NCBI RefSeq assembly: GCF_006345805.1
Contig: NC_043004.1
Coordinates: 7,750,001 to 7,814,000, forward strand
Length of the DNA: 64,000 nucleotides
DNA from: Octopus sinensis
Lineage: Eukaryota
Direction: 5' to 3'
Shown here: piece after piece, positions 3,665-44,991 of the stretch
How positions within the stretch are numbered: position 1 is the first letter of the stretch
Layout: each line of letters starts with the position of its first letter
Notes under the pieces: model-generated
What the model was told of the DNA's origin: nothing
Databases searched by the model: none
The model's input: only the letters and a program-made list of their open reading frames with translations
Position numbers and translations under genes: made by a program

Positions 3665-4103
3665 TAATAATAATAATAATGAAATTATTGTATACAGTGC
3701 TCAGGTACAACACAACTTGTCAAAAGTGCATATAAAGCATATGCAGTAATGTACAAATGTCTGGGAAGTGAACAGTGTATGAGTCAGATACATGCTTGTG
3801 TGTGTATGGAGGGGAGAAGATCAGGTGTAGTATTGGCAAATCTCAGGAAGCATGGAAGTTTTGAAGGATGCAGTGCTCTGACGACTAACAACTGATGTCG
3901 GCAGTTTGTTCCATGCTTCAGCAACTCTTAGTGTGAAAAAATGGTTTCCGAAAGTCATGGGAGCTGTGCTGTTTTCTGACTTTGTAAACATGTCCACGGG
4001 TGTTAGACAGATGGAGTTTGAAAAGGTGCTCAGAGTTATTGTTTGTAAGATAGTTAATAATTTTATGGGTGTCTGCCAAGTCAGCTGCCAGACGTTGGAG
4101 TTT

Positions 4104-4105
<2 letters not shown>
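3665..4105 (-). mobile_element. CR1/L2-type LINE 3' fragment
   Basis: [16 protein letters not shown]...[13 protein letters not shown]; near-identical copy at about 42075-42570 and a partial one at about 48545-48750. Confidence 0.8.
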
Positions 4106-4175
<70 letters not shown>

Positions 4176-4185
4176 GTGTGTGTAT

Positions 4186-4223
<38 letters not shown>

Positions 4224-4302
4224 GTATATATATATGTATGTATATATATATGTATGTATATATATATGTATGTATATATACATGTATATATATATGTATG
4301 TA

Positions 4303-4335
<33 letters not shown>
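4106..4335. repeat. (TA)n/(TATG)n microsatellite
   Basis: Direct; explains the YI-repeat ORFs. Confidence 0.97.
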
Positions 4336-4336
<1 letters not shown>

Positions 4337-4501
4337 AAAGAGTAAGTATCACACTTCAAACAAACAAACCCAAGTACTGGGTTTGATTTATTTGATTAAA
4401 AACCCTTCCAGGCAGTAATCCAAAAGACAATTAGGAAAACCAGAAATGTAATTGTAGCATAGGAAAAAGTAATATAAAATTGTTATTAGGTTAATATTTA
4501 C

Positions 4502-4829: not shown

Positions 4830-5040
4830 GTATGTGTGTATATGTTTGTGTGTTTGTCCCCCCAACATCGCTTGACAACTGATGCTAGTGCTTTTACGTC
4901 CCCGTAACTTAGCGGTTTGGCAAAAGAGACCGATAGAATAAGTACTAGGCTTACAAAGAATAAGTCCTGGGTTCGATTTGCTCAACTAAAGGCGGTGCTC
5001 CAGCATGGCTGCAGTCACATGACTGAAACAAGTCAAAGAG
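4675..5040 (+). mobile_element. tRNA-derived SINE (5'-truncated copy)
   Basis: ggttccgggttcagtcccactgc box-B-like head, internal (TA)n; same family as 23985-24385. Confidence 0.75.
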
Positions 5041-7730: not shown

Positions 7731-9858
7731 GTAGAGGTAGGAGCTTTCTGAACTTTGCCCAGGCTATTATTAATTTTTTTTGTTAATCCAGTTCAGTTAT
7801 GAGTGTTTCTAGGAATTGGATCAGAGCAGGAATGGCAGTGTCATACAATATAACAATTAGAACTGTGAGGAATTTACTAGACACATATCCATTAATACCC
7901 CATTTCTTCATTTCTTTCCCTTATTCTAACTGCTTCAAACAATTCTTCAGAAGGAGTTTAAGACCTTTGTTGATGATTTCAATCAAATTCTGCTGAAAAA
8001 CTTCAGAAGATCAAGACAGGACTGCGTGGGCAGAAAAAGAAACCCGAAGCATTCGGGAAGTGACTTTATGTCGTGTTTAGGAAGGGAATAGACAGGAAAT
8101 CCATCTATTCAAACACTGAGCATATATAAAGGGTTATGTAGGGTCTGTAGTGGACTGACATGAAGAAAACAGCTAATGGTACGGACATCCAGAGTTTGAA
8201 CGTGTTGGAATGCTTACAAGGATCTTTAGAAATGGTCGGTAAATTCAGTTACCTTGAGGATAATCACTACTAAAGATGAAGATAATGGTAAAGTCTGAAT
8301 GTGAGGGAATAAAGTTCAGAGAACTGCAAAAGAGATTTTGGAATCTCTGTGTCCTGAGGTTGGTGCCTGTTTTCAGCATTCATTCCGCTGAGGTCGACTT
8401 TGCCTTTCATCCTTTCAGGGTCGATAAATTAAGTACCAGTTACGCACTGGGGTTGAGCTAATTGACTGGCCCCCTACCCCAAAATTTCGGACCTCGTCCC
8501 TTGAGTAGAAAAGAATAATAAAATTTCCACACGAGGAGGACACTGATCTATTATAAGAGACTTTTCTTACTAAGGCAACTAAACACGATAATTATCATCT
8601 AATTAAACATTTGCTAATTATACCAAACCAAACACTGCTTAGTGTAATACATTTTATCACTCTGTGGAACCTATTTACAGTGAGATGGATACTTTGCAAA
8701 GTTGAGTATCTGGATCATAAATACAGCCAAGTGTTATAGACAGAACATGACCGACTGACCATTAAATTGGCCAGTCTCGTTCTCTTCAGACAGTTTCTAT
8801 TAATAAATATCATTTGCTATATTATTAACCCCATTTTTGCCTTTGTACTAAACACAAGGTTTTGACCAGTCTCTCAGAGTTCTTAGAACAGGTGCTTCAT
8901 ATACCTGCTTGTTGAAAGAGGTAACTAAAGAAGGAAGAGGGGAAGAAAAGACATTCAGTTGTAAAACATTAGCTCAAAAAGTCTCATTCAACCCATGCCA
9001 GTATGGAAAAACATCCAGTCCATGCCAATCTTAAGTCACCTTCAAATGTCTTCTCTCTAAATATATACGTTTACCTTCATTAATAATAAAAGCCCTGAGT
9101 TCAAACCCAGACCAGGACACCTGGAGATGAACAGACACTGGCTTGACAGAAATGTCATATAAAATGCAAAAGATGGTATTCATGGTTCAAAAAATTTCTA
9201 AACTGGTCAGCAAAAGGTTATGAAATCCTATTTGATTCTTTGCCCTCAATACAATCCCAATCACTTGGTTATAAACATTAATAATGGTAATCACACCAAG
9301 TTCTGAATCTCAGACTTTGACCGCTACTTTTTCTCCTCTGCAGTATTTAGAGCATTTCTTGTAACCATTAGCAGGATGAAGAATCACCAATGAAGTCTTT
9401 GTCCAAAGAGCGTTAAGAAAAAATGAAGATTATGAAGTCTAAACCATTCTAGTTTATTAAATGTAGCTGGAAATTGGAGGAAGAAAGTGAAATGAAATGA
9501 TTCCACCAAGAATCAAACAAATGTTGCCAATATTTATTTTAAACCCAAGCCGTATGTTCAACGAACCACAAAATCTGAATGGATCATCATAATTTAATTA
9601 AGCAGAGTATCATTAAAAAATGTTTTTATGTTTTAGTGAAAAAAAAAACCTTTTCCAGGGCCACAAGATGAGTGGGAAAAAGGGAGGAGGTCATTGTCAG
9701 AGTAAAAGCCTGGTATAAAAGCTTGCAACAGAATGAACTCTGCTTGAGGTACCCAAGGGACAAAGGGGTGGAGGTTAAACCAGATGACTGGTTTAGTCCA
9801 TCACTCACTGTCATCAGTCACTCTTTTTATTTGATTAAAAACATAATCAATGACTTAC

Positions 9859-11063
9859 CGTTTGAGATTGTTTACATGAGAGTCTTTATAAACTTTGGAT
9901 TCCGTTGATTGTTCATCTTCTCCAGAAGATGGTTGTTTCATCCTGAGATACTGAAATTCCAATGGAGTCGGGCTGCTTTTCTTCCCCTCTTCCTTCAGTT
10001 TCTGTAATTCGTTTTGCTGAAACTTTATAAAGTTTTTCTTTTTATTTTCAGTTTTCTCCAGAAGTTTCTGCTTAAAGCCAACAATGAGTTCAGGTGGTAT
10101 GAGCTGATAAGACAAATGAGGGCTGAGCATCTCTGATTTGTCTTTGGGGATTTTTAGTAATGGCATCGGGGAAGGTTCTTCTGGTTCTTCCAGATCAGAA
10201 GAATCAATCAACAATTTAAAAGTTTGTTTCGGAAATTGCATCGTGTTGATATTAGTATTAGTAGCATTGTGGTAATTTACAAATTTACTGCTGCCAGAAT
10301 TTGCCGATTTCTGGGAGGAAGAAACTTTATTGTTAATTTCCACAGCTTCTTGCCTAACTTGGGGAATACATAAATAAGGTTCTGGAATTTTAAAAATATT
10401 GGGTTGTTTCTTTGTAAGACAAAGCAAAGGCATTCTGACAGGGTTCTCTGGGTTTGATTGCTGCCCCTCCTGGTTGTTAACTGCAGTGGGTTCTGTTACT
10501 GAATTAAGTTGTGGCAATGACATCAAAGGTGGAGATTCCGAGACGACATTGTCGAGATTAAATAAACGGTAGTTCTGATGTGAACCTTTATTGGTCACAC
10601 CACCCGTCATTGCATCAGTTACTCTCCTGTTATCATTAACAATCTGTTGGTGCTGGTAATTTTCTGAAGGATCAATTCTTTGATTGTAGTTCTTATTATT
10701 CAAAGGTTTTGAAATCAAAGTTGAAGAACTTTCTTTTGTAGTCTGAGATATTTCTTGAAGATTCTCCAATTCCTTTAAGACTCCTCTAATATTTCCAACT
10801 GAGCTTTTAGGATGTTTTAGGCTTCTTAGTCTGAAGGATGAGGTAGAATCTGGTGCTCTGATATCAACTTGTGTCTTTTTAGAAGATATTGTCACAGGTG
10901 GTCTTTGATTCTCAGACTCTGAATCGGAACTAAAACTATCCTCGGCCACACTGGAACCAGCTGGAATTTTATTAATGCTGTCTGCTCTCTGGTTTCTTTT
11001 GTTCTTTACCTTTTTATGAGGTAACAAGGCATCTATAACAGACTGGAATCGGTCGTTTTGAAC
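9859..11063 (-). CDS. CPLANE1: CPLANE1 coding exon 21 (1205 nt, low complexity)
   Basis: ttttag|VQNDRFQSVIDALLP... extends ORF 9855..11027; donor CG|gtaagt; phase 0 to 2. Confidence 0.87.
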
Positions 11064-18124: not shown

Positions 18125-20650
18125 GAGCCAGTGAGGTGGCACTGGCAACGACTATGCTTGAATGGTGCTTTTTATGTGCCACTAGCATGAGACCAGTCAG
18201 ACGGCACAGGCACCGACCACATTCGTATGGAGCATTTTATGTGCCACTGGCACGGATGCCAGTCTGCTGGGACTGACATTGCCACGCTCAAATGGTGCTT
18301 TTTATGTACCAGTCAAACGTCGCTGGCATCAGCCACAACAATGATTTCACTTGACTCAACAGGTCTTCTCAAGCACAGTATATTGCCCAATGATTGAAGG
18401 ACACTCTTAAAGGGGCTGATTATGCGACACTGGCATAGGTCACGGTTACGGTCTCATTTGGCTCGCTGAGTCTTCTTAAGCACAGCATATCTCTAAAGGT
18501 CTCAGTCACTTGTCATTGCCTCTGTGAGGCCCAACGTTTGAAGGTCGTGCTTCACCACCTCATTCCAGGTCTTCCTGGGTCTACCTCTTCCACAAGTTCC
18601 CTGTACTGCTAGGGTGTGACACTTTTTCACACAGCTGTCCTCATCCATATGCAACACATGATCATACCAGTGCAGTCATCTCTCTTGAACACCACATCTG
18701 ATGCTTCTTATGTCCAAGGTGCTTACAATTTGTTGTATATGCACACTAACATTACACACATCCAGCGGAGTATACTACCTTCATTTCTTGCAAGCTTACA
18801 CATGTTTTCAGCAGTCACGGCCCATGTTTCACTACAGTGTAGTAGGGCTGTTCATACACATGTATCATACAGTCTACCTTTCAGTCTGAGCAAGAGCCCC
18901 TTTGTTACCAGCAGAGGTAGCAGCTCTTTGAACCCAGGCTATTCTTACTCTAATAGCTATGACTAGATAACGGAAACTATCAACTACTTCTAGTTTTTCT
19001 CCCTGGAATGTGATGGAAGCTGTTTTCTGCATATTTTCAGTGTTTATTGCCCCTGTGCATTGCCACACACAAACATTATCTTCCCAGTTAGCCATTCTTT
19101 GATATTGCTGCACCTCTTATGTGTCCATAGCTTACATCAGGTACATCTTATGGAGTTTCTACCTACACCTTTTCTACAGATCGAGCTAGGCTATCCACCT
19201 GTAGGGATTTGTGGTTTGTCTGCCTTCCTACTTATTAAGACTTTGGTTTTTGCTAGATTGACTCTAAGGCCCTTCAATTCTAGACCTTGCTTCCACACCC
19301 TAAATTTCTTCTCTAATTCTGATAGTGATTCAGCTATTAGAGCAAGGTCATCAACATATAGGAGATACCAGGGGCATCTCATCTTGAATTCCTCTGTTAT
19401 TGCCTGGAAGACTATGATGAATAAGAGGGGCTTGAGCACTGATCCTTGGTGAATTTCTACTTGTACCCTGAAATCTTCACTATACTCGTTGCTGAGCCTC
19501 ACTTTACTGACAGCATCCCTGTACCTGACATGTACAGCTCTCACTAACCACTCATATATCCCTAGTTTCTAGATTGTCCACAAGATAAGGGATCAGGGGA
19601 CCCTGTCAAAAGCTTTCTCCATGTCAACAAAAGCCAAGTACAGGGGTTTATCTTTGGTTAGGTATTTCTCCTGCAGCTATCTTACCAGAAATATTGACAT
19701 CAGTGGTGCTTCTCCCTGGCACAAACCCAAATTGCATCTTGTCTAAACTAACTCTCTCCCTAATTAGTTGGGCTATGACCCTCTTTATGACTTTTATCAC
19801 CTGATCTAACAATTTGACACCTCTGAAATTATTTGTATCTAGGGCGTCACCTTTACCTTTGTAGCAGTTGACTATGGTGCTGCTACACCAGTCATTGGGT
19901 GTGACTGCTTCATGTATCACCTGATTGACTATACAGGTGACTAGACAATAGCCGACACTGCCAGATATTTTAAGCATCTCTGCAGTGATTCCTGATGGGC
20001 CAGGGGCTTTCCTTGTCTTCACACCTTTAATTGCTTTATCTACCAAGGTACTGTCAATTTGAATAGCTGGTCCCTCTGTTGGGTTGACATTTGGCAGGCT
20101 CTCTTTCTCCCATTCATTCTCTTCCTTTAGCAACCTTTCATAGTGGCGTCTCCAGGTCTTTCTCCTAGCAGCCTCATTTAACGCAAGTGAGCCGTCATCC
20201 ATGCAGACACATTTCTCTCCTATGACATCTTGATTCTCTGTCACACACTGTCTTGCAACACAAAACACCTCAAGTCTTTGGCCCTCGCGATGCAGAACAC
20301 TGGGAAAATATTTTCTTATCTGCCTCCCCTCTTGCTAAGTAAACCTATCTCTCCTAGCTTCTCTTCTGGCAATCTGACACAGTTCCCTGCTACCACTGTT
20401 CTTCCAGTCCTTCCATGCTTGTTTCTTTTCTCTAATGGCCCTGTCAACTACATTGTTCCACCACCATGTTACCTTAGACCAAGATGGGACTTTGCACCAT
20501 CCCCAGATCTGGTCAGAAGCCCTCAACAGGTTGTCCCATAGGAACCTCCAGTTGTTTTCCACATTATGTGATGCTATGTCCTCCTTTTTTTCATCAAAAG
20601 CTTCAAGTAACACGTCTCTAAATCTCTGTCCATTCACAGGAAATTTGTAA
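18125..20650 (-). mobile_element. Degraded 5'-truncated RTE-clade LINE with reverse transcriptase
   Basis: KAPGPSGITAEML, NNFRGVKLL, QFGFVPGRSTTD, IHQGSVLKPLLF and LLYVDDL spread over several frames; continues into the family 3'UTR. Confidence 0.92.
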
Positions 20651-21308
20651 ACACTACTAAATTTACTGCAACTTGATTAAGTTTTCAATTCACCAGGGCT
20701 AATTATAATGTTTGGACTAGTTACTAGCATCTAAAGTGTTTTGCAGTAAACAGATCTTCCCATACTTTAAACTCTTCTCCTAACAAGCTGCTCCCTTGGG
20801 TTTCACAACCTTGCAAGCTGCATGGCGACCTTACTAGTGTCAGTGGCATGAAAAAAAGCATTCAGCACATACTGTAAAGTGACTGCCATTAGTAAGGGCA
20901 TCCAGCCATTGAAACCCTGGAGTACAAGGCCGTGTTTGAGCCCAGTGAAGTCAGTTAAACCATCCAACCCATGCCAGCTTGGAACATGGACATTAAATGA
21001 CGACGATGATGATGATGTTTGGTAATCACAGCTGCAAACACAAAGTTACTAATTAAGTCAGTAAGGGAATCTTCACATGGTCACTTAACCTGCAAAAAAT
21101 AGCAGCCAAATCTCTCTCTCTCTCTCTCTCTAGCTTAATCAGGAGGAAGGACTCACAACCAGCTGTTTTAAAAGGATAAGCATACATGTTGGATAATTAG
21201 TTTTACATACACAATCATGTCTAAAACACAACAGGATAGCCATCTTTGATCAGAGCCAATCAAAGACTAATTAACAACAACAACAACAACAACAACCAAT
21301 TTACTCAC

Positions 21309-22924
21309 GTGTGGAGAACGTATTCGTACGCTTGATTCACTTCTTCACGTTCTTCTTGTTCTTCCTCTTCCAGGTTTTTAAATTTGAGAGGTTTCATCGT
21401 TTCCAAAGGATTCCATACCACTTTCTGTTTTTGTTTTTTCTTTTTTTTATTAGTTTTGCTGCCAATTTTATTTGATGTCAAAGACTGAGTTTCCTGTTCA
21501 TTTCTGGCTTCAATTCCATTCTCTGAACTTCTCAACCATTTTCTAAATTCTTCTTTGTCAAATGAAAGAGCTGGAGGAAGCGAAGGCTCTTTGTCTTTTG
21601 ACAGAGATGAAGAATCACTCTTTTTCTTTCTTTTCTTCTTTTCTAAGTGACTTCTGGAACTCTGAAAAGTCAGTTTCTTGGAGGTTTCTTTTAGACTGGA
21701 AGCAAACTGGACTGAATGGTTATCTGTAGTTGTATTAGTTAAAGGATAATACTTCTGTTCCAAAAGCCACAAAGCAAGAACCAACAACTGAGGCTGGACA
21801 ATGGCATGCATGGCAGAATCTCCATCTTTTTGTTCCTCTTCAAGTTGAGAAATGAGAATATGGTTCTTTTTAGCCCACATAATCAGCCAATCAACCAACT
21901 GGTTCAGTTTCAAATACTGAGAACCAAAATCAATATCAAATGACCACAGAATATTTTGTTTGTCTGAAATACTATCCAAAGATTTTGATCTGTTACTCCG
22001 TGGCATCGTCGTTTCTCTACATCTGTCCTGCCTCCTTTTAGCTTGGCTCCACAACTGTCTTTTCTCAACTGCAGTCATTTGACTAACAGGACTTGTAGCA
22101 GAGTAGTGACATGAGGCATCGGCTGAATGACTCCGATTAAAAAGACCTTTGGTTTTTTTAGGAGTTTGTTGATTAACTGAACCAAAACTTGGATCCAATA
22201 TATTACTGGAATCTTGGAAATTGGTCGCTTCTTTGCATGGCTTTGATAAAATAAGCAGACTCTGTTTAGGATGTCGACCTGTCATTGTTCGAAATGGCAT
22301 GGATTCCATTTGCATGGCAACAATTTCTTCCGTGAATACATCAAGCAATGGGGAGAATGACTTTGATTGTGATCTCTCTTCTTCCAGAAGTTTTGAAAAG
22401 GAAATGTCATAAAACATATCCAAGAATTTACCATATGATTCACATGTTTCAAATGGGAAAGAACCAACATTAATACTATGTTCTGTGGCGGTTTTGGAAT
22501 CAAACATAAACTCACAGTAATTTCCAAAGTAGTTCTTTTTTTTATCCATAGTCTTCTCCACAGAACTGCAATATTCTTGGAAGTATACTGACAAAGACTT
22601 CTCAGATGAAGAACTTCTTCTGATAATGCCACTTTTTTGCTTAATACTTTGGACCTTGATAACTGGAAATGTTTGCCATCGTTTCAACAAAATTTCCAGT
22701 TTTTCTTGAACTTCAGAATCAAGCTGTTCCACATCGTGACAGAAAGTTGCCAGGATTTGAGCTGTATAAACTGAAGGTTCCAATTCTGATAAAACTGAGA
22801 GAAGAACTTTGTAAGACCATTCTTCATCAGCTAAATAATGGCTGAATGGGATGAAATGAACATTCCAGGTAAGACAAACTTCACACAAAGCACACCATTC
22901 TTCATCTTTTAATGTAGATGGTTT
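21309..22924 (-). CDS. CPLANE1: CPLANE1 coding exon 18 (1616 nt)
   Basis: tttaag|KPSTLKDEEW... within ORF 21305..22975; contains YGKFLDMF, LVDWLIMWAK, LALWLLEQ; donor AC|gtgagt; phase 0 to 2. Confidence 0.92.
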
Positions 22925-23984
22925 CTTAAAAAGTAAATAAAATGAATACAGAAAATTATATTTAATGCTTAGCAAACAAAACAGAGTTTTTTTTATTTCT
23001 AAAAAATAAATTAGGGAAAAAAGTAATTTTAATATGTTTAAAGGGAGATTAGCAAGTGTATTCTAGTTTTAGAGAAGGTAGATTCTGTTCCTGCAAGTTG
23101 TAAGAGGCAACTAAAAGGGTTGGCAACACAAAAGGGCATCCAAGAACACAGGCATCCTAGAAGACAGACCCAGTGAAACCAGTTGACCGATGCCGGAATG
23201 GAAAAGTGGACATAAAATGGTGTTGAAGGACAGGGATGCTTAACCCTTTTGCATTTAAACCAGCCCTATTTGGCCCAAATAGTCTTCCAGTTTTATGTTC
23301 AAACTGAACAGATCTGGTCTCTCACACCTATCCTACAATGTCGTTCTAAAAATAAACTATCACATCATCAAAATCTCAAAGTAACAGGTTAACACGAGAT
23401 TAACTCAAAACAATTTGAATAAATAAACATTACATTTAAAAGTAATCTGAATGCAAAGTGGGGTCAAAGGGTGAAACTGGGGGGGAGGTATTAAATGTAC
23501 CGTGGACTGACCAATAGAAGACAGGAAAAAAAGATGGCGGTGCAAGAAAAAGTGGTCTCAGTTTACTTTGCAGCTCTGTGGTTATGTGACACTTTGGATA
23601 AATGTCTTCTGCTCTAAGATTTCACTTGACCAAGCTCATTATTATTGTTTAGGAGACTTTATCCCTTGCCTGGTGCCTTTAATAGGGGTAATGTCTTCAT
23701 TCCCTAAACCAGTGGAGGCTAAAGTCATTGCTGTCCGAGGCTGAAACTCTGTACACATCCATGTAGGCGTGGTTAAGTGACCACAGATCGTTTTGGAACC
23801 ATGTAGCTTTGTATTCCATTCCTTTCTAAATATCCGGAAGCTAATACAGGATGGGGATTATACATGGATAAACCAAAAATAGAATTTCAATGCCCGACAC
23901 TTGGATTGAAATCGCTGCACAAGGGAGGAAACTCTACACTCACTGCTTACTTGAGTAAAAATCTGGTTTAATGAAAAGTACATT

Positions 23985-24385
23985 TTACTCTTTTACTCTT
24001 TTACTTGTTTCAGTCATTTGACTGCGGCCATGCTGGAGCACCGCCTTTAATCGAGCAACTCGACCCCGGGACTTATTCTTTTGTAAGCCCAGTACTTATT
24101 CTATCGGTCTCTTTTGCCGAACCGCTAAGTGACGGGGACGTAAACACACCAGCATCGGTTGTCAAGCAATGCTAGGGGGACAAACACAGATACACAAACA
24201 CACACACACATACATATATACGACGGGCTTCTTTCAGTTTCCATTAACCAAATCCACTCACAAGGCTTTGGTCGGCCCGAGGCTATAGTAGAAGACACTT
24301 GCCCAAGATGCCACGCAGTGGGACTGAACCTGGAACCATGTGGTTGGTAAGTAAGCTACTTACCACACAGCCACTCCTGCGCCTG
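23985..24385 (-). mobile_element. Full-length tRNA-derived SINE with (gagtaaaa)n tail
   Basis: Head ggcgcaggagtggctgtgtggtaag...ggttccaggttcagtccc; related copies near 2600, 12330-12650, 15700, 43305-43890 and 56510. Confidence 0.85.
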
Positions 24386-26093: not shown

Positions 26094-26911
26094 CTATATA
26101 AAATGAAAATGGAAAAAATAGAGAGAATATGGTTAAAAAATTTCCAGCACTTTCTACAATGGATACGTTTTTTTTTTATAATTAAAAGTCATTCTAAGAC
26201 AATCACATCATCAAAATCTCAAAGTAACATGTTAACACAAGATTGACTGGCTCCTGTGCCGATGGCACTCAAAAGGCACTGTTTGAGCATGGTTGTTGCC
26301 AGTGCCACATAAAAAGCACCCATTACACTCTCTGAGTGGTTGGCATTAGGAAGGGCATCAAGCTGTAGAAACCTTACCAGATCAGATTGGAGCCTGGTGC
26401 AGCCTCCTGGCTTGCCAGTCCTCAGTCAAACCGTCCAACCCATGCCAGCATGGAAAGCAGATGTTAAACAATGATGATGATGATGATAATAATCTTCTGT
26501 CACCAATACTTTTTGGGTAAAATTTCGGTGAAAATTTTCGAAAAGTCTTTGGGGAAATTTTCGGCAAAAATTTTTGAGTAAAATTTTCGGTGAAAATATT
26601 CGGTAAATTTCCGAAAAATTTTTGGGGAGAATTTTCAGTGGAACTCTTCGAAAAGTTTTGGGGGAAAATTAACGGCAAAAAGTTTTGGGTAAAATTTCGG
26701 TGAAAATTTTCAAAAAATCTTTGGAGAAAATTAACGGCAAAAAGTTTTGGGTAAAATTTTCGAAAAATTTTTGGTGAAAATTTTCGGTAAATTTTCGAAA
26801 AATTTTTGGGGAGAATTTTCGGCAAAAATTTTCAAAATATTTTTGGGAAAATTTTTGGTGAAAATTTTGGAAAAATTTTTGGGTAAAATTTTTGGGGAAA
26901 ATTTTCGAAAA

Positions 26912-27113
26912 CCCATATAACGAATATGCTCCATATGCTGAAGTCTATAAAAGTCGATATCGTCATAGTTGTTAAGTGTAAGGCAGAATCTGGTGTATCG
27001 GGGATGGTGAGGCATCTTGACTGTAATATTAAACCAGAATTCACTCTATACACAGAAAAAAGCAGCAAGAGCTACATAAAAATCTATTTTTAGCCATAAC
27101 ATCTATTTTTAGC
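26912..27113 (-). mobile_element. Endogenous CRESS-DNA-virus-like ori plus Rep N-terminal fragment, copy 1
   Basis: ATG at 27015: MPHHPRYTRFCLTLNNYDDIDFYRLQHMEHIRYMGF; TAATATTAC at 27031-27023; repeated ATCTATTTTTAGC at 27082 and 27101. Confidence 0.75.
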
Positions 27114-27378
27114 TTGGGTAAAATTTTCCACAAATTTTTGGGTAAAATTTTCGTAAAATTTTTGTGGAAAATTTTCGTAAAAGTTTTGGGTAAAATTTCG
27201 GTGAAAATTTTCGAAAAATCTTTGAGGAAAATTTTCGGCAAAAATTTTTGGCTAAAATTTTCGGTGAAAATTTTCGGTAAATTTTCGAAAAATTTTTGGG
27301 AAAAATTTTTGGGTAGAATTTTCGGTGAAAATTTTGGAAAAATTTTTGGGTAAAATTTTCGGTGAAAATTTTCGAAAA

Positions 27379-27581
27379 CCCATATAACGAATATGCTCCA
27401 TATGCTGAAGTCTATAAAAGTCGATATCGTCATAAGTTGTTAAGTGTAAAGCAGAATCTGGTGTATCGGGTATGGTGAGGCATCTTGACTGTAATATTAA
27501 ACCAGAATTCACTCTATACACAGAAAGCAGCAGCAAGAGCTACATAAAAATCTATTTTTAGCCATAACATCTATTTTTAGC
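27379..27581 (-). mobile_element. CRESS-like ori/Rep fragment, copy 2 (frameshifted)
   Basis: ATG at 27483: MPHHTRYTRFCFTLNNL* (+1 insertion); nonamer at 27499-27491. Confidence 0.75.
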
Positions 27582-27858
27582 TCGGATAAAATTTTTCGAA
27601 AAATTTTTTGGTACAATTTTCAGTGGAACTCTTCGAAAAGTTTTTGTGGAAAATTTTCGTAAAAGTTTTGGGTAAAATTTCGGTGAAAATTTTCGAAAAA
27701 TCTTTGGGGAAAATTTTCGGCAAAAATTTTTGGCTAAAATTTTCGGTAAATTTTCGAAAAATTTTTAGGAAAAATTTTTGGGAAAAATTTTCGGTAAATT
27801 TTCGAAAAATTTTTGGGTAGAATTTTCGGTGAAAATTTTGGGTAAAATTATTCGAAAA

Positions 27859-28148
27859 ATCACAAGGCCAGCAGTGCCAAAATCACAAAGTATAGAAGGC
27901 CAGCGGTGCCAAAATCAAAAAGTATGGAAAGCCAGCGGTGCCAAAATCAAAAAGTATAGAAAGCCAGCGGTGCCAAAATCAAAAAGTATGGAAAGCCAGC
28001 TGTGCCAAAATCAAAAAGTATGGAAGGCCAGCGGTGCCAAAATTAAAAAGTATGGAAGGCCAGCGGTGCCAAAATCAAAAAGTATGGAAGGCCAGCGGTG
28101 CCAAAATCACAAAGTATGGAAGGCCATAATTTGTGATTTTGGCAGCGC
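27859..28148. repeat. 32-bp minisatellite (gaaggccagcggtgccaaaatcaaaaagtatg) x about 8.5, ending in an inverted unit
   Basis: gtgcc recurs every 32 nt from 27874 to 28098; 28130-28148 is the reverse complement of the unit (18/19). Confidence 0.95.
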
Positions 28149-28907
28149 TAAAATTTTTAGGTAAAATTTTTTGGTGCAATTTTCAGTGGAACTCTTCGAA
28201 AAGGTTTTGCGGAAAATTTTCGTAAAATTTTTAGGTAAAATTTCTGTGAAAATTTTCGAAAAATCTTTGGGGAAAATTTTTGGGGAAAGTTTTCTATGAA
28301 AATTCTCGAAAAGTTTTTGGTGAAAATATTTGGTGAAAATTTTCGAAAAATTTTTGGGTAAAATTTTCGGTGAAAACTTTCAAAAGATTTTTGGGTAAAA
28401 TTTTCGAAAAATTTTTGGGGAAAATTTTCGCTAAAATTTTCAGTGAAAACTGGAAAATTTTCCGTGAAAATTTTCGAAAAGTTTTTGGAGAAAACTTTTG
28501 GTGAAAATTTTCGGAAAATTATTTGGTAAAATTTTCAGTGAAACTCTTCCAAAAATTTCTGCGGAAAATTTTCGAAAAATTTTTGGGGAAAATTTTCGTA
28601 AAATTTTTGGTTAAAATTTTCGAAAAATCTTTAGGGAAAATTTTCGAAAAATTTTTTGGTACAATTTTCAGTGGAACTCTTCGAAAAGTTTTTGGAGAAA
28701 ATTTTCGTAAAATTTTTAGGTAAAATTTCTGTGAAAATTTTCGAAAAATCTTTGGGGAAAATTTTCGGCAAAAATTTTTGGTGAAAATTTTCGAAAAATT
28801 TTTGGAGAGAAGTTTCGGCAAAAATTTTCAAAAAATTTTTGGGAAAATTTTCGGTGAAAATTTTGGAAAAATTTTTGGGTAAAATTTTCGGGGAAAATTT
28901 TCGAAAA

Positions 28908-29079
28908 CCCATATGCTGAAGTCTATATCGTTATAGTTGTTAAGTGTAAAGCAGAATCTGGTGTATCGGGGATGGTGAGGCATCTTGACTGTAATATTAA
29001 ACCAGAATTCACTCTATACACAGAAAGCAGCAGCAAGAGCTACATAAAAATCTATTTTTAGCCATAACATCTATTTTTA
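28908..29079 (-). mobile_element. CRESS-like ori/Rep fragment, copy 3 (two internal deletions)
   Basis: ATG at 28983: MPHHPRYTRFCFTLNNYNDIDF...; nonamer at 28999-28991; 10 and 18 nt deletions. Confidence 0.72.
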
Positions 29080-29556
29080 TTTCGGGTAAAATTTTCGAAA
29101 AATTTTTGGTACAATTTTCGAAAACTTTTTGCGTAAAATTTTCGAAAAATTTTTGAAAAATTTTTGGGTAAAATTTTCGGTGAAAACTTTCGAAAAATTT
29201 TCACCAAATATTTTCACCAAAAACTTTTAGAAAATTTTCATGGAAAACTTTCCCCAAAAATTTTTGGAAAATTTTCGCCGAAAATTTTCCCCAAAACTTT
29301 TCCCAAAAATTTCACCAAAAATTTTCAAAAAATTTCACCGAAAATTTTCCACAAAAATTTTTCGAAAATTTTAAACAAAAATGTTTAGAAAATTTTCGCT
29401 GATAATTTTCCCCGAAAATTTTCCCAAAAATTTTTCCAAAATTTTCATCGAAATTGGTACAATTTTCAGTGTCATTACCTGAAGCGTTCTCATGTCAAAG
29501 TAATTAAGAAATATAAAAATAATTTATAGGGTTAAATGACAGGTAACTAAACTTAC

Positions 29557-38589: not shown

Positions 38590-39730
38590 GTTATGAAGAT
38601 CATGGAGAGAGCCATAGCACAATTGATACGTGACGGTACATCTCGATGAGATGCAGTCTGGAAAAAGTGCCTTGGATGCAATCTTCCTAGTGAGGCAAAT
38701 ACAGGAGAAATACTTGGCTAAGCGTAAACCACTATTCCTGGCCTTCATTGACCTGCAGAAGGCATTTGACAGAGAACCACATACAATAATCTGGTGGACA
38801 CTTAAGAAACTAGGGGTTGATGCACCAGCTGAGCACAAAAACGCAGGAAGTGAAGTGAGAGTTAACAATGATTTCAGAGACAAATTAAGCGTGAAGGTAG
38901 GAGTTCACATCAAAGTTCAGTTCTCAGTCCTCTGCTGGTCATCCAAAATGCTAATGATCTGATTCTCATTGCTGAATCTATAGTGCAATTATAGAAGAAG
39001 AAATTCTGAACGCGGAAGCTAAGCTTAGAACCAAAAGGTCTTAAGGTAAACTTAACAAAAGCGGAGGTTTTAATAAGAAGACAGGGCTTGGCCCTCTCAT
39101 ATCTTCCATTGATGCCGACTGTTTCTTCTTCACTATATCCGCAAGGATTATGTACAAATTCCATATACTGCATCCAATGAAAGCAATGGACACAAAAGGT
39201 GTAGTGAAACCACAAGCAGTCTATCTGAGAATGCAAACTTCAAATGTGGTAGGTGCGATGGAGCAATTCATACTTTGAACACACCATAAATAGAATCTCC
39301 TCTACGTCCAGATGACTCATTAGAAGTAGTTGAGAGTTTTGTTACCAAGATAATGAAAATTAGCAGGGGAGGTGGTTGTTCTGAAAGTAAAGCAGCCAGA
39401 GTAAGAATGGGCTGTAGAAAGTTCAGGGAGCTACTACCACCACTGGCTATAAAGGGCTTTTACCCCTCAGAGTGAAGAGCAAATTATATGAAACTTGTGC
39501 TAGAACTGCAATGCTGCATGGTAGCGAGACATGAACCTTGAATGCAGAGGACTTGAGAAGACTGGAAAGAAATGAAGCTAGCACTGGACATGTAATGTAA
39601 GTGTGCTTGACAGACATGGCACAAAAAAGTACTGAGAGGAAAATGGGGCACGAAGGGAAATCAGATGTAGAGTACAAGTGACCAGACAGTATCAGTTTGG
39701 ACATATAGTTGAGGACAGCTGTACAATGAA
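38590..39730 (+). mobile_element. Degraded RTE LINE RT fragment (antisense to host gene)
   Basis: DAIFLVRQIQEKYLAKRKPLFLAFIDLQKAFDR. Confidence 0.85.
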
Positions 39731-40288: not shown

Positions 40289-41719
40289 CTAAGATTAAAA
40301 AAAAGAAAAAAAAAGAAAAATTTTTAGGCTAAAACTGCTGAAGAATTTAATCAATTACTATTGAATCTATATTATAATTATAGTATAGACTTTAGCGTAT
40401 TTAGGAACACCCTATACAGTAGAATTAGTATGCTGTACAATATGTACAGCATACTACATAAAATCTTGTCAAGAAAGAAATATGAAATTATCTAATATTA
40501 AAGTTTTTCTCTCAAAGGCATTAACAACATAAATGAAGTGAAACAGCTTGAACTAGGACAGAAAACAGCCTTAGGTGTGGTTTCATCTAGAGTTTACATT
40601 ACAACTGAAACCACTAAACAGAACACACACACACACACCATGATCATGATCAGTTAACATCTGTTTTCCATGCTGGTATGAATTGGATGGGTTGACAAGA
40701 GCTGGCAAGTCAGAAGACTGTACCAAGCTCTACTGTCTACACACACACATGCATAATGTGTACACAGTAGCATCACAGGCAGATGAAAAGGGGAGTTCGT
40801 ATAGAGAAGAGACAGAGCAATAGTCAAGAATATGAGTATCCAAAACCTGAGGTGGCTATTTAAGAGTAACTGACAGTTTCTCAGTGACCCAAACAGCAAT
40901 GGTGCAAGGTTCTGTGTAACCATAGTAACCAGAGTAAATACAGAGAGGGAAATGTTCAAGGAACTATTTGCATTGGTTCACTATAAAGGAATTCTCTTTG
41001 AGCGAAGGGTAGTTTGTATGAGGCTTGTGTTGGAAATGAGATGCTGCAACGTCGCCTTACTGGCATCTGTGCCATGTATAAAAAGATTCGAGTGAGGTCA
41101 TTGCCAGTACTGCCTGACTGGCCCCCGTGTCGGTGACATGTAAAAAGCACCCACTACACTCTCAGAGTGGTTGGCGTTAGGAAGAGCATCCAGCTGTAGA
41201 AACCATGCCAAATCAGATTGGAGCCTGGTGCGGCCGTCTGGTTTGCCAGCCCTCAGTCAAAATCGTCCAACCCATGCTAGCATGGAAAGTGGACGTTAAA
41301 CGATGATGATGATGATGTGTAAAAGAGAATGGAGTTTGGTGCGGTCCTCTGGATCACTAGTCCTGTTGGAGCATCCGACCCATGCCAGCATGGAAAACAG
41401 ATGTTTAATGATGATGATGAAGATGATGCATGGAGGCTGACTAGAAATACAGCAAACATTCTGCACTTGGTGTTTAATGCTGATGGGTATGAGAATGATG
41501 CAATGAGGTCAAGGAAAAAAAATAGCAGACAGCTTCAATGGCCATGGGAAAAAAAACTGAGCTAATATAGAACATGTGGTGCACATGAAGGATAAGAGGA
41601 AGGGTGACAAGTGGCAGGCAATCCAGCCAAAAGAATTGGAAGAACAAGGAATACGCGAGAAGAACTGCTAAGGAAGACCTGCCTAATCTATGGATACACA
41701 GGGAAAAAATGGACTGCTG

Positions 41720-41795
41720 CTGCTGCTGATGGTGATGATGATGATGATGGTGATGATGGTGGTGATGATGTTGGTGATGATGATGGTGGTGATGA
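41720..41795. repeat. (GAT/GGT)n microsatellite
   Basis: Direct; source of the poly-His ORF. Confidence 0.9.
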
Positions 41796-42074
41796 ATTCC
41801 TGAAAACAAATGGACTGAAGATTGCAGACTGTAATTGAAGTGAAGACACTCCAGAGTGGCTTAACATCAGGCTTTATCTGGAGCTAAACAAATAATTGTT
41901 ATGTAGATCTTCTCACGAGGCTTATTTAAAACCATAAAGATTTAAACATGTTTATGAAGGATGCAGTGAAGAGTTTGCAATAAGACAGAACCAACAAATG
42001 GACCAGCACCTTATTGACTCTTCAAGCTGCAGATCCTGGCAAAATAAGAGACTCTAAAAATATATATTATAATA

Positions 42075-43468: not shown

Positions 43469-43914
43469 AAGTAAGACAGGGGTTATGGGTGTAACCCACT
43501 ATGGGATAGTATTTATCCAATATACTGTTGGTAGAGTACCCAGATTCTTAATACATAAATGTTTTTAATTGCAATGCAATTAACTCATTTATTGTATTAA
43601 ATGGGTGAAGGTAAATATTCTAATATCCGAAAGTTGATGAACAAACTAAATTTGTTTCTCCATTTTCTTATTTATATATATATATTTGCACGTGTGTGTC
43701 CGTGTTTCTCCCTGTACCATCACTTGACAACCGATGTTGGTGTGTTTACGTCCCCGTAATTTACCGGTTTGGCAAAAGAGACCGCTAGAATAAGTACTAG
43801 GCTTACAAAGTATAAGTGCTGGGATCGATTTGTTTGACAAAAGGCAGTGCTCCAGCATGGCCAGCAGTCAGATGACTGAAACAAGTAAAAGAACAAACGA
43901 ATCAAAGAACTTAC

Positions 43915-44991
43915 TCTTGTAAAGAACTATTTTGGATTGTTTGCTCAACATTGGGTTTCTTTTTAGGAACTTTCTTTCTTGAATTCGAAGTCTTTGAGCA
44001 ATTTCTTGAAGGTTCATACCAACTATTATCTTCTGATTCTGTGTTTATTTCCAGAAAAGGATCTTCCCTTCCCCTGGCTTTTGATGGTGGATATTTTGAA
44101 GACCAGGTGTAAGTCTTGCTAAGAATTCGGTTAGTAAAGTTGAGTAAAGCTTCACATCCCAGAAGTGTTTTAATAGCAGGATCAGATTTGGAAAGGTTCT
44201 TGTTATTAAGTATAAGTTTAACAATTTTATGAACAAAACAAATGATGACATTGAGATGTCGTTGATATAAGAAATCAAAATGAAGAAGATGCAGAAATTC
44301 CCGAAACATTCGAATCAAATGAAAAAGAGAGGATTTATCTGACATTTCATTCTTTAAAGACTTGGTTAATGATGACACCTCAAGAAAAAGCTGGAATACC
44401 TTGGAGGTATTCACTAAAGTCGCTTTGGTAATTTTTGCTCTTGTTGGATCCCAGGTACAACCTGATGTCACCTCAAGTTTCCAAGCTAAGAGCAAACTGA
44501 GATAAATATTTTTCAAAATTTCTGAGTGGGTTTTAGAAGTTTTTGGCTGTGATTTGCAGTTGTTGGTTAAAGGAACACCAAATGTAATGACTCCAGCATC
44601 TAGATTATTAAGATGATCCTCTTGAAGAATGCTTTGGTCACTATCTTCTGAATGTGTTCCCTCTTCAAAGTGATAGGATCTGGGAGGTTGCAATAAAGTA
44701 AGGCTGCTAATGTTTTCCTTGACAAAAATTCCATCAGCAGAGCTCTGTTCGGAATGGGTAAAATCAAGTTTGTATTCTTTACTTAGTAAAGAAAGCTTCT
44801 GAGAGGACCAAGAGACGAGGTTCTGAACCAGAGACAAACAGTCCAAATTGTAAGGCAGTTCAAGAACAGTCACAAGAAAGCCGTCACTACAAATAATAAT
44901 TGGTAAATGTGGATGAGTACTTATTGAGAACTTTTGAGAATTGAGAATCTCATTTCGTTGATTTGCCTCGGCTTTTGATATATTTTCATCT
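43915..44991 (-). CDS. CPLANE1: CPLANE1 coding exon 8 (1077 nt)
   Basis: tcacag|DENISK...QKFSISTHPHLPIIICSDGFLVTVLEL...NSSLQ|gtaagt; extends ORF 43911..44873; phase 2 to 2. Confidence 0.92.

What the first reader, a model, noticed from the sequence alone, without database searches (positions are those of the whole stretch)
27016..27113. Origin anatomy: TAATATTAC nonamer 7 nt before the Rep ATG plus paired iteron-like repeats
On the Rep-coding strand the order is GCTAAAAATAGAT twice (19-nt spacing), a weak TATA-like gtgtatag, TAATATTAC, 7 nt, ATG. This resembles the iteron-TATA-nonamer arrangement of geminivirus-type origins. The nonamer is intact in all three copies while the coding part has decayed. 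Caveat: the flanking stem is imperfect (wobbles and mismatches), not a clean hairpin.
Basis: partly seen in the sequence, partly recalled or inferred. Interest (0 to 1): 0.75.

Follow-up and report, generated by a model that had tools for sequence, protein, structure and literature searches.

The report
Dead circovirus-like Rep stub, tandemly amplified
Three near-identical ~190-bp fossils of a small circular ssDNA virus (part of its intergenic region plus the first 36 codons of its replication gene) sit inside a host AT-rich satellite array; they keep an origin-like 9-mer but have no hairpin, so they are viral relics and not a working replication origin.

Summary
The sequence features are real. 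On the minus strand, three copies (about 26915-27113, 27383-27581 and 28905-29081) each carry two 13-nt repeats, a TATA-like motif, TAATATTAC, 7 nt and an ATG.

The ORF is viral. Its 36 codons match two relic proteins (E 4e-9 and 1e-7 against 1.84 billion proteins). One of these passes Pfam Viral_Rep and matches solved circovirus Rep nuclease domains.

Only motif I survives. The gene stops before motif II and runs into host satellite, and no other Rep piece lies in the window.

The origin reading is only partly supported:
- **No hairpin.** The 9-mer folds at -0.2 kcal/mol, worse than shuffles. In 40 related environmental genomes it sits in a perfect 8-12-bp stem, 15-71 nt before the ATG.
- **Different layout in the closest relatives.** Both have their hairpin about 100 nt upstream, with the nonamer on the opposite strand.
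- **"Iterons" not supported.** They are a local 19/20-nt tandem duplication with no counterpart in relatives.
- **Conservation argument void.** The copies are about 97% identical recent duplicates (P = 0.55).

Whether the 9-mer is a decayed loop relic or chance is roughly even odds. This is a new member of a known kind: an endogenous CRESS-DNA virus element, arranged like the Nicotiana GRD repeats.

The parts
26915..27113 (-). Copy A of the ~190-bp virus-derived unit (intergenic-region fragment plus rep 5' stub)
   Evidence: 100% self; copies B and C 97.5% and 96.9% identical
26908..27015 (-). Copy A rep stub: 36 codons, aligning to about the first 40 residues of intact Reps (motif I only). 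Open as far as it goes, 3'-truncated before motif II, then runs into satellite
   Evidence: P0001 76% id, E 4.4e-9; P0002 57% id, E 9.9e-8; alignment A3; tblastn
27023..27031 (-). Origin-type 9-mer (copy A), 7 nt before the ATG, with no stable flanking stem
27046..27053 (-). TATA-like motif (copy A). Relatives have TATA-like runs at a similar distance from the ATG
   Evidence: alignment A2
27061..27068 (-). TGCTGCT block (copy A; longer in copies B and C). It is the only upstream stretch that aligns with L009/L012, where it lies just 3' of the hairpin
   Evidence: (11-23 of 500 shuffles reach the score)
27082..27113 (-). The two 13-nt 'iteron-like' repeats of copy A; the full 19/20-nt head-to-tail duplication runs on a few bases 3' of them on the rep strand
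   Evidence: no counterpart in relatives; 9 of 13 match to satellite GCCAAAAATTTTT
27383..27581 (-). Copy B of the unit. Its rep stub carries one frameshifting indel (in-frame stops follow) plus the same 3' truncation. Nonamer at 27491-27499, 13-mers at 27550-27562 and 27569-27581
28905..29081 (-). Copy C of the unit. Its rep stub has internal deletion(s) totalling 29 alignment columns plus the 3' truncation. Nonamer at 28991-28999, 13-mers at 29050-29062 (exact) and 29069-29081 (2 mismatches)
26510..29447 (.). Host AT-rich satellite complex (12/13/24/37/61-nt periods) that embeds the three units. Copies A and B with their satellite form a 468-bp higher-order period
   Evidence: TRF: period 468, 2.0 copies, 89% matches, 26920-27858

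Best explanation
**What it is.** This is a dead endogenous viral element. A germ-line integration of a circovirus-like (CRESS-DNA) virus has been reduced to a ~190-bp piece holding about 100 nt of the intergenic region and the first 36 codons of rep.

**How it became three copies.** The piece lies inside a host AT-rich satellite and was copied along with it, by unequal exchange or slippage with a 468-bp period. That gave three ~97% identical copies. The identity and array structure are shown; the copying mechanism is inferred.

**Why it cannot act as an origin.** The gene keeps only Rep motif I. Motifs II and III and the helicase are absent from the window. No inverted repeat frames the nonamer, so the unit can neither encode a nickase nor present the loop that such nickases cut.

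**The 9-mer.** TAATATTAC next to the ATG is, at slightly better than even odds, what remains of the ancestral origin loop, with a stem eroded mostly by transitions. This is inferred and not shown.

**The 13-nt repeats.** They are a local tandem duplication, not Rep-binding iterons.
For: **Viral identity**
- An exhaustive phmmer search of the 36-aa peptide against 1.84 billion proteins gave two real hits: P0001 (76% identity, E 4.4e-9) and P0002 (57% identity, E 9.9e-8).
- P0002 scores 38.3 bits on Pfam Viral_Rep PF02407, above the 26-bit cut-off, across profile positions 2-82 of 82.
- P0002 matches solved circovirus Rep nuclease domains (2hw0, 5xor, 6wdz) at E about 1e-6 to 1e-5.
- Alignment A3 places the window peptide on about the first 40 Rep residues, ending before motif II.
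- Intact Reps from IMG/VR hit the window only at the three stubs, and so do the relic ORFs of L009 and L012.

**Host context**
- Satellite on both sides, reverse-transcriptase fragments elsewhere in the window, and no Rfam hits.
- The contigs carrying P0001 and P0002 end in dispersed repeats that also occur in this window at 84-88% identity. The relatives are therefore integrated copies in a related host.

**Recent duplication**
- Copies are 96.9-97.5% identical over the whole unit, with a 468-bp period.

**No origin structure**
- The window hairpin folds at -0.2 kcal/mol, z +1.4.
- Environmental relatives fold at -12.3, -18.2 and -15.7 kcal/mol, z -3.5 to -6.2.
- 40 of 47 relatives carry perfect 8-12-bp stems.

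**Hints that the 9-mer is a loop relic**
- It is rare in shuffles of the upstream 100 nt: 0.3-3.3%.
- 10 of 11 in-register flank positions are either paired or one transition away from pairing. P is 0.004 for that register and 0.07-0.08 after correcting for 25 registers.
- The relatives' conserved loop block finds its best match in the window upstream exactly at the nonamer (35-126 of 1000 shuffles reach the score).
Against: - The window peptide itself has no Pfam hit, no PDB hit and no word-index hit. The Rep assignment is transitive, through two short relic proteins.
- The loop-relic reading conflicts with both closest relatives. L009 and L012 have their hairpin about 100 nt upstream of the ATG, 5' of the TGCTGCTG block, with the nonamer on the strand opposite rep, and no nonamer in the leader.
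- The 7-nt gap to the ATG is outside the 15-71 nt range of 38 same-strand relatives.
- The anchor used to call the architectures homologous (TTGCTGCTGCT) is only marginally significant.
- The host species was not identified, so integration rests on context within this one window.
Confidence: 0.8

Rival explanations
1. The 9-mer is a chance AT-rich match in the 5' leader. By homology with the closest relatives, the true ancestral origin was a hairpin about 100 nt upstream on the opposite strand. It was lost at, or eroded near, the 5' edge of the unit, where the 13-mer duplication and satellite now lie. The viral-fossil reading is otherwise unchanged.
For: - L009 and L012 both have the hairpin 5' of TGCTGCTG, with the nonamer opposite to rep, and no nonamer in the leader.
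- The window's TGCTGCT and TATA-like blocks sit at matching distances from the ATG.
- There is no stem in the window.
- The 7-nt gap is unprecedented among 38 relatives.
- The looser motif appears in 3.3% of shuffles in this 71% A+T leader.
Against: - The exact 9-mer is expected in only 0.3% of shuffles.
- The flanks are more symmetric than chance (P 0.004 uncorrected, 0.07-0.08 corrected).
- The relatives' loop block matches best at this very spot.
- Only two close relatives are known, and both are themselves decayed relics.
Confidence: 0.4
2. A still-competent origin: the nonamer plus iterons could be recognised and nicked by a related Rep supplied in trans. Two direct copies 468 nt apart would then be units that could be released as circles.
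For: - The nonamer is exact in all three copies.
- The copies are direct repeats with a 468-bp spacing.
- Precedent for truncated rep plus origin-like sequence in direct repeats comes from the Nicotiana GRD elements (PMC5014472).
Against: - No hairpin is present.
- The putative iterons have no counterpart in relatives.
- Invariance across the copies is explained by their recent duplication (P = 0.55).
- No Rep is encoded anywhere in the window.
Confidence: 0.03
3. Not viral at all: a host satellite variant whose short ORF resembles Rep motif I by chance.
For: - The peptide alone gives no Pfam, PDB or word-index hit.
- The unit is embedded in satellite, and the 13-mer is 9 of 13 identical to a satellite word.
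Against: - E 4.4e-9 and 9.9e-8 against 1.84 billion proteins, to proteins that go on into Rep motif III (and, in L009's next reading frame, motifs II and III) and pass Pfam Viral_Rep.
- The nucleotide match to L009 is 76-77% over 107 nt and starts exactly at the ATG.
Confidence: 0.02

Closest known systems
Geminivirus-related DNA (GRD) repeats of Nicotiana, and the EGV1 repeats of yams
   Same: The layout matches: a degenerate, truncated rep plus an intergenic fragment with an origin-like sequence, present as multiple direct repeats in a host chromosome (PMC5014472).
   Different: - The host here looks like an animal (LINE-type reverse-transcriptase fragments), not a plant.
- The relative's Rep is the circovirus type, Pfam Viral_Rep, and Gemini_AL1 is not among its hits.
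- The rep remnant is far shorter, at 36 codons.
- The unit is amplified as a passenger of an unrelated AT-rich satellite, not as tandem viral genomes.
- EGV1 keeps a GC-rich stem around its nonamer. This element keeps none.
Endogenous circovirus-like / CRESS-DNA elements (CVe) of invertebrate genomes
   Same: Rep-derived, often fragmentary, divergent from sampled viruses, and flanked by host DNA (PMC6069186).
   Different: - Published CVe are detected and described by their rep coding sequence.
- Here only about 13% of rep is left. The feature of interest is the non-coding upstream piece and its amplification within a satellite.
Rolling-circle origins of environmental circovirus-like genomes (IMG/VR contigs L013-L072)
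   Same: An origin-type 9-mer lies on the rep strand upstream of the rep ATG (38 of 40 relatives). The Rep N-terminus is of the same type (A3).
   Different: - Relatives frame the 9-mer with perfect 8-12-bp G+C-rich stems (-12 to -18 kcal/mol) and place it 15-71 nt before the ATG.
- The window has no stem and a 7-nt gap.
- Its 9-mer variant was not seen among the 40 relatives, which mostly carry TAGTATTAC (28 of 40).
Relic copies L009 and L012 (Logan assemblies of SRR11869385/390/391), the closest relatives
   Same: - The N-terminus is 57-76% identical.
- They share a TGCTGCTG block and a TATA-like run upstream.
- They sit in a host that shares dispersed repeats with this window.
   Different: - They retain a recognisable hairpin about 100 nt upstream, with the nonamer on the strand opposite rep.
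- They keep more of Rep. P0002 spans the whole Viral_Rep profile. L009 has motifs II and III and helicase-like stretches spread over at least three reading frames.

Membership tests
CRESS-DNA virus Rep (HUH endonuclease, Pfam Viral_Rep PF02407) | Motif I (FTLNN-type strand) near the N-terminus | tested here: met
   Alignment A3: T, N, N, Y and the preceding F are invariant across the window peptide, P0001, P0002 and four intact IMG/VR Reps.
CRESS-DNA virus Rep (HUH endonuclease, Pfam Viral_Rep PF02407) | Family profile matched above the curated cut-off | tested here: not met
   The window peptides gave 0 families at E<=10. Only the relative P0002 passes (38.3 bits against 26). Membership of the window stub is therefore by transitive homology.
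CRESS-DNA virus Rep (HUH endonuclease, Pfam Viral_Rep PF02407) | Motif II (metal-binding HxQ) and motif III (catalytic Tyr) | tested here: not met
   The stub ends before motif II. No further Rep-like stretch was found in the window by tblastn with intact Reps or with the relatives' ORFs.
CRESS-DNA virus Rep (HUH endonuclease, Pfam Viral_Rep PF02407) | C-terminal superfamily-3 helicase domain | tested here: not met
   Absent from the window.
CRESS-DNA rolling-circle origin | Conserved nonanucleotide | tested here: met
   Exact in all three copies. It is 1-2 mismatches from the variants read in 40 relatives.
CRESS-DNA rolling-circle origin | Nonanucleotide presented in the loop of a stable inverted-repeat hairpin | tested here: not met
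   The fold gives -0.2 kcal/mol, and 192 of 200 shuffles fold at least as well. Relatives have 8-12-bp perfect stems at -12 to -18 kcal/mol. Only a faint symmetry remains.
CRESS-DNA rolling-circle origin | Iterons (Rep-binding direct repeats) next to the hairpin | tested here: inconclusive
   - The 13-mers are 51-82 nt 5' of the nonamer.
- They form a 19/20-nt tandem duplication and have no counterpart in L009, L012 or in 68 IMG/VR loci beyond chance.
- The repeat census in relatives showed no clear pattern.
- Rep binding cannot be tested with these tools.
CRESS-DNA rolling-circle origin | Position in the intergenic region upstream of rep, at the family's usual distance | tested here: not met
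   It is upstream and on the rep strand, like 38 of 40 relatives. However, it lies 7 nt from the ATG against 15-71 nt (median 62) in relatives. The two closest relatives place it about 100 nt upstream on the other strand.
Geminivirus-type origin (iteron - TATA - stem-loop) | Rep of the geminivirus family (Gemini_AL1 catalytic domain) | tested here: not met
   The relative P0002 matches Viral_Rep, and no Gemini_AL1 hit is listed. Its PDB matches are circovirus Reps.
Geminivirus-type origin (iteron - TATA - stem-loop) | Rep transcribed away from the stem-loop on the strand opposite the nonamer, with iterons between its TATA box and the stem-loop | tested here: not met
   Here the nonamer lies on the rep-coding strand, between the TATA-like motif and the ATG. 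The geminivirus layout is taken from my own knowledge of that family.
Endogenous viral element (EVE) | Virus-derived sequence contiguous with host DNA | tested here: met
   Viral identity. Host satellite, reverse-transcriptase fragments and long host ORFs lie on the same 64-kb stretch.
Endogenous viral element (EVE) | Inherited or fixed: present at the orthologous locus in related individuals or species | not testable with these tools
   The host was not identified. No eukaryotic genome collection is on hand. Only related relic copies at other loci were found.

The most novel reading that the evidence does not exclude
The relic is the seed of a host higher-order satellite repeat, and its nonamers remain recognisable to a related circulating virus. 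Under this reading, direct copies 468 nt apart would mark a chromosomal site that interacts with exogenous Rep, or serves as a template for small-RNA defence against that virus lineage. This animal CRESS-DNA lineage is otherwise almost unsampled: only two relic relatives turned up among 1.84 billion protein clusters.
Probability: 0.04. Interest if true: 0.7.

Novelty: new member of a known kind. Interest (0 to 1): 0.3.

Why it matters
- It adds a fossil from a barely sampled circovirus-like lineage. Only two relatives, both relics, were found in 1.84 billion protein clusters, and none in IMG/VR or JGI metagenomes at this level of similarity.
- It shows that a very short viral stub can be multiplied as a passenger of a host satellite. 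That is an animal counterpart of the Nicotiana GRD repeats.
- It is a caution for scans. An intact nonamer in tandem copies says nothing about selection when the copies are recent duplicates. A nonamer without its hairpin is not an origin.

Tried and rejected
1. Pfam, PDB and word-index searches with the window peptide itself found nothing. Only the exhaustive phmmer search did.
2. A word-index search with P0002 returned only P0002.
3. Searches for closer exogenous relatives all failed:
   - the nonamer plus motif I pattern in IMG/VR gave 0 hits;
   - the back-translated N-terminus gave 0 in IMG/VR and 0 in metagenomes;
   - a back-translated NNY..D.Y pattern gave 91 + 10 loci, none confirmed by tblastn.
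4. I considered that the 13-mer repeats are the decayed, duplicated loop of an L009-type hairpin. By eye, GGCTAAAAATAGA resembles GGTAATACTAGA. This was rejected as unsupported, because the relatives' loop block aligns best at the nonamer region and not at the 13-mers.
5. Host identification failed:
   - no Rfam hits;
   - the 94-aa window ORF is not on record;
   - the 556-aa host ORF has one unnamed homologue cluster from Logan runs;
   - a paper search for the SRA run prefix gave an irrelevant hit.
6. A census of iteron-like repeats beside the hairpins of 39 relatives showed no clear pattern: 16 had repeats of 6 nt or more on the 3' side, against 8 on the 5' side.
7. P0003 and P0004 from the phmmer search are internally repetitive proteins, not Rep.

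Full report
**1. What is in the sequence**

The finding's letters are all present on the minus strand.
- TAATATTAC occurs exactly three times in the 64-kb window, at 27023-27031, 27491-27499 and 28991-28999, against 0.73 expected.
- Each is followed by 7 nt and an ATG.
- Each is preceded by a TATA-like gtgtatag, a TGCTGCT block and two copies of GCTAAAAATAGAT spaced 19 nt start to start. One of the six 13-mers has two mismatches.

The three sites are not independent. They are copies of one ~190-bp unit: A about 26915-27113, B about 27383-27581, C about 28905-29081. The copies are 96.9-97.5% identical over their whole length.

The units are embedded in an AT-rich satellite with 12/13/24/37/61-nt periods, spanning 26510-29447. 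Copies A and B, each with its satellite, form a 468-bp higher-order period. The two 13-mers are the cores of a 19/20-nt head-to-tail duplication.

**2. Is the ORF a Rep?**

The ORF is 36 codons long before it runs into satellite-encoded low-complexity sequence.
- On its own it gives no Pfam hit at E<=10, no PDB hit and no word-index homologue.
- An exhaustive phmmer search of 1.84 billion representative proteins gave two real hits: P0001 (78 aa, 76% identity over residues 1-34, E 4.4e-9) and P0002 (104 aa, 57% identity, E 9.9e-8). Two further hits are internally repetitive junk.
- P0002 matches Pfam Viral_Rep PF02407 at 38.3 bits (cut-off 26) over profile positions 2-82 of 82.
- P0002 also matches solved circovirus Rep nuclease domains (2hw0, 5xor, 6wdz and others) at E about 1e-6 to 1e-5.
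- In alignment A3, the window peptide covers about the first 40 Rep residues. It includes motif I and stops just before motif II.
- tblastn with five intact environmental Reps, and with the relatives' own ORFs, finds nothing else Rep-like in the window.

The "Rep ATG" is therefore real, but only about 13% of the gene is left.

- All three are 3'-truncated.
- A has no internal break.
- B has one frameshifting indel, with in-frame stops after it.
- C has internal deletion(s) totalling 29 alignment columns.

**3. Context**

The window is eukaryote-like DNA.
- G+C is about 0.38.
- It holds reverse-transcriptase fragments and long minus-strand ORFs without known domains.
- It has no Rfam family.

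P0001 and P0002 come from short Logan contigs: L009-L011 from SRR11869391, SRR11869385 and SRR11869390, and L012 from SRR11869385. The ends of these contigs match dispersed repeats in this window at 84-88% identity. They are therefore integrated relics in a related host. L009 holds more of Rep (motifs II and III and helicase-like stretches), spread over at least three reading frames.

**4. Testing the origin reading**

*(a) Hairpin.* As single-stranded DNA, the 46 nt around the nonamer fold at -0.2 kcal/mol, and 192 of 200 shuffles fold at least as well. Like-for-like windows from three environmental relatives fold at -12.3, -18.2 and -15.7 kcal/mol (z -3.5 to -6.2) with the nonamer in an 11-nt loop. 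The relic L009 still reaches -7.3 kcal/mol.

*(b) Position in relatives.*
- Of 47 IMG/VR relatives with at least 150 nt upstream, 40 have an origin-type 9-mer framed by a perfect 8-12-bp stem.
- 38 of these are on the rep strand, with 15-71 nt (median 62) between the 9-mer and the ATG. None is at 7 nt.
- The two closest relatives differ again. Their hairpin lies about 100 nt upstream, immediately 5' of a TGCTGCTG block, with the nonamer on the strand opposite rep.
- Their leader has no nonamer.
- The window shares the TGCTGCT block and a TATA-like run at similar distances from the ATG, but this anchor is only marginally significant (11-23 of 500 shuffles).

*(c) Conservation.* There are 11 substituted columns among 173 ungapped unit columns. 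The chance that none falls in the nine nonamer columns is 0.55.

*(d) Iterons.* The 13-mer has no counterpart upstream of rep in L009 or L012, and no more than chance matches in 68 IMG/VR loci. Its best match in the neighbouring satellite is 9 of 13. A repeat census beside the relatives' hairpins was inconclusive.

*(e) Evidence on the other side.*
- An origin-type 9-mer within 100 nt upstream of a Rep start is rare in dinucleotide-preserving shuffles: 0.3% exact, 0.9% any variant seen, 3.3% for the loose pattern.
- The flanks abutting the nonamer give 6 Watson-Crick, 3 G.T and 1 A/C of 11 positions. That is the pattern a G+C-rich stem would leave after transition decay. P is 0.004 for that register and 0.07-0.08 after allowing 25 registers.
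- The relatives' conserved loop block finds its best match in the window upstream exactly at the nonamer, in either orientation (35-126 of 1000 shuffles).
- The nonamer itself holds no CpG, so it would outlast a CpG-rich stem in a methylating genome. This last point is my inference.

**5. Explanation**

The best-supported reading is a dead endogenous CRESS-DNA (circovirus-like) element.
- It has been cut down to part of the intergenic region plus 36 codons of rep, then multiplied with the surrounding host satellite.
- It encodes no nickase and offers no hairpin, so it is not a working origin.
- Whether the 9-mer is the eroded loop of the ancestral origin or a chance AT-rich match in the leader is close to even. 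I put the relic reading slightly ahead.
- Three weak signals agree on the relic reading. The counter-argument rests on two decayed relatives and a marginal anchor.
- The 13-nt repeats are best read as a local tandem duplication.

**6. Comparison with what is known**

- The nearest precedent in layout is the geminivirus-related DNA of Nicotiana, and EGV1 of yams. These consist of truncated rep plus an origin-like intergenic fragment, in direct repeats (PMC5014472).
- The nearest in lineage are the circovirus-like elements reported in invertebrate genomes (PMC6069186).
- The geminivirus arrangement itself does not fit. The relative's Rep is the Viral_Rep type, and the nonamer lies on the rep strand between the TATA-like motif and the ATG.

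**7. Verdict**

The iterons, the geminivirus-type anatomy and the selective-conservation argument are not supported.

This is a new member of a known kind, and its interest is modest. The lineage is almost unsampled, and the passenger amplification within a satellite is a neat case, but nothing suggests present function.

A genome-wide census of independent copies is the decisive descriptive test.

Noticed in passing
window 27864-28126: A clean 32-bp minisatellite (8.2 copies, 94% matches, no indels) sits inside the AT-rich satellite complex between copies B and C. A 128-aa ORF (27778-28164, + strand) reads through it.
   Followed up: no
window 9855-11027, 21305-22975 and 43911-44873 (all minus strand): Three long ORFs (390, 556 and 320 aa) have no Pfam family. 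The 556-aa ORF has a single homologue cluster (P0005, 42% identity, Logan ERR runs). They are probably exons of an uncharacterised host gene. If so, the satellite/relic complex lies in one of its introns, on the same strand.
   Followed up: partly
window 19191-19544, 19648-20268 and 38630-38962: Fragments of LINE-type reverse transcriptase. RVT_1 scores 42.4 bits at 19191-19544 and gives a weak hit at 38630-38962. They support a eukaryotic host context.
   Followed up: partly
window 4961-4997, 24025-24058 and 43828-43862: Short dispersed repeats match the ends of the relatives' contigs L009 and L012 at 83-88% identity. This implies those relics sit in a host related to the source of this window.
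   Followed up: partly
L009:482-527 and L012:452-497: In both closest relatives the origin-type hairpin lies about 100 nt upstream of the rep ATG, with the nonamer on the strand opposite rep. The loop and its 5' flank are strongly conserved between the two (score 42, 0 of 500 shuffles), while the stem arms differ.
   Followed up: yes
window 3906-4352 and 41474-41809: Microsatellite-driven ORFs: TA/CA-type repeats reading as YIYI..., and a His/Gln homopolymer run. These are ordinary low-complexity DNA.
   Followed up: no
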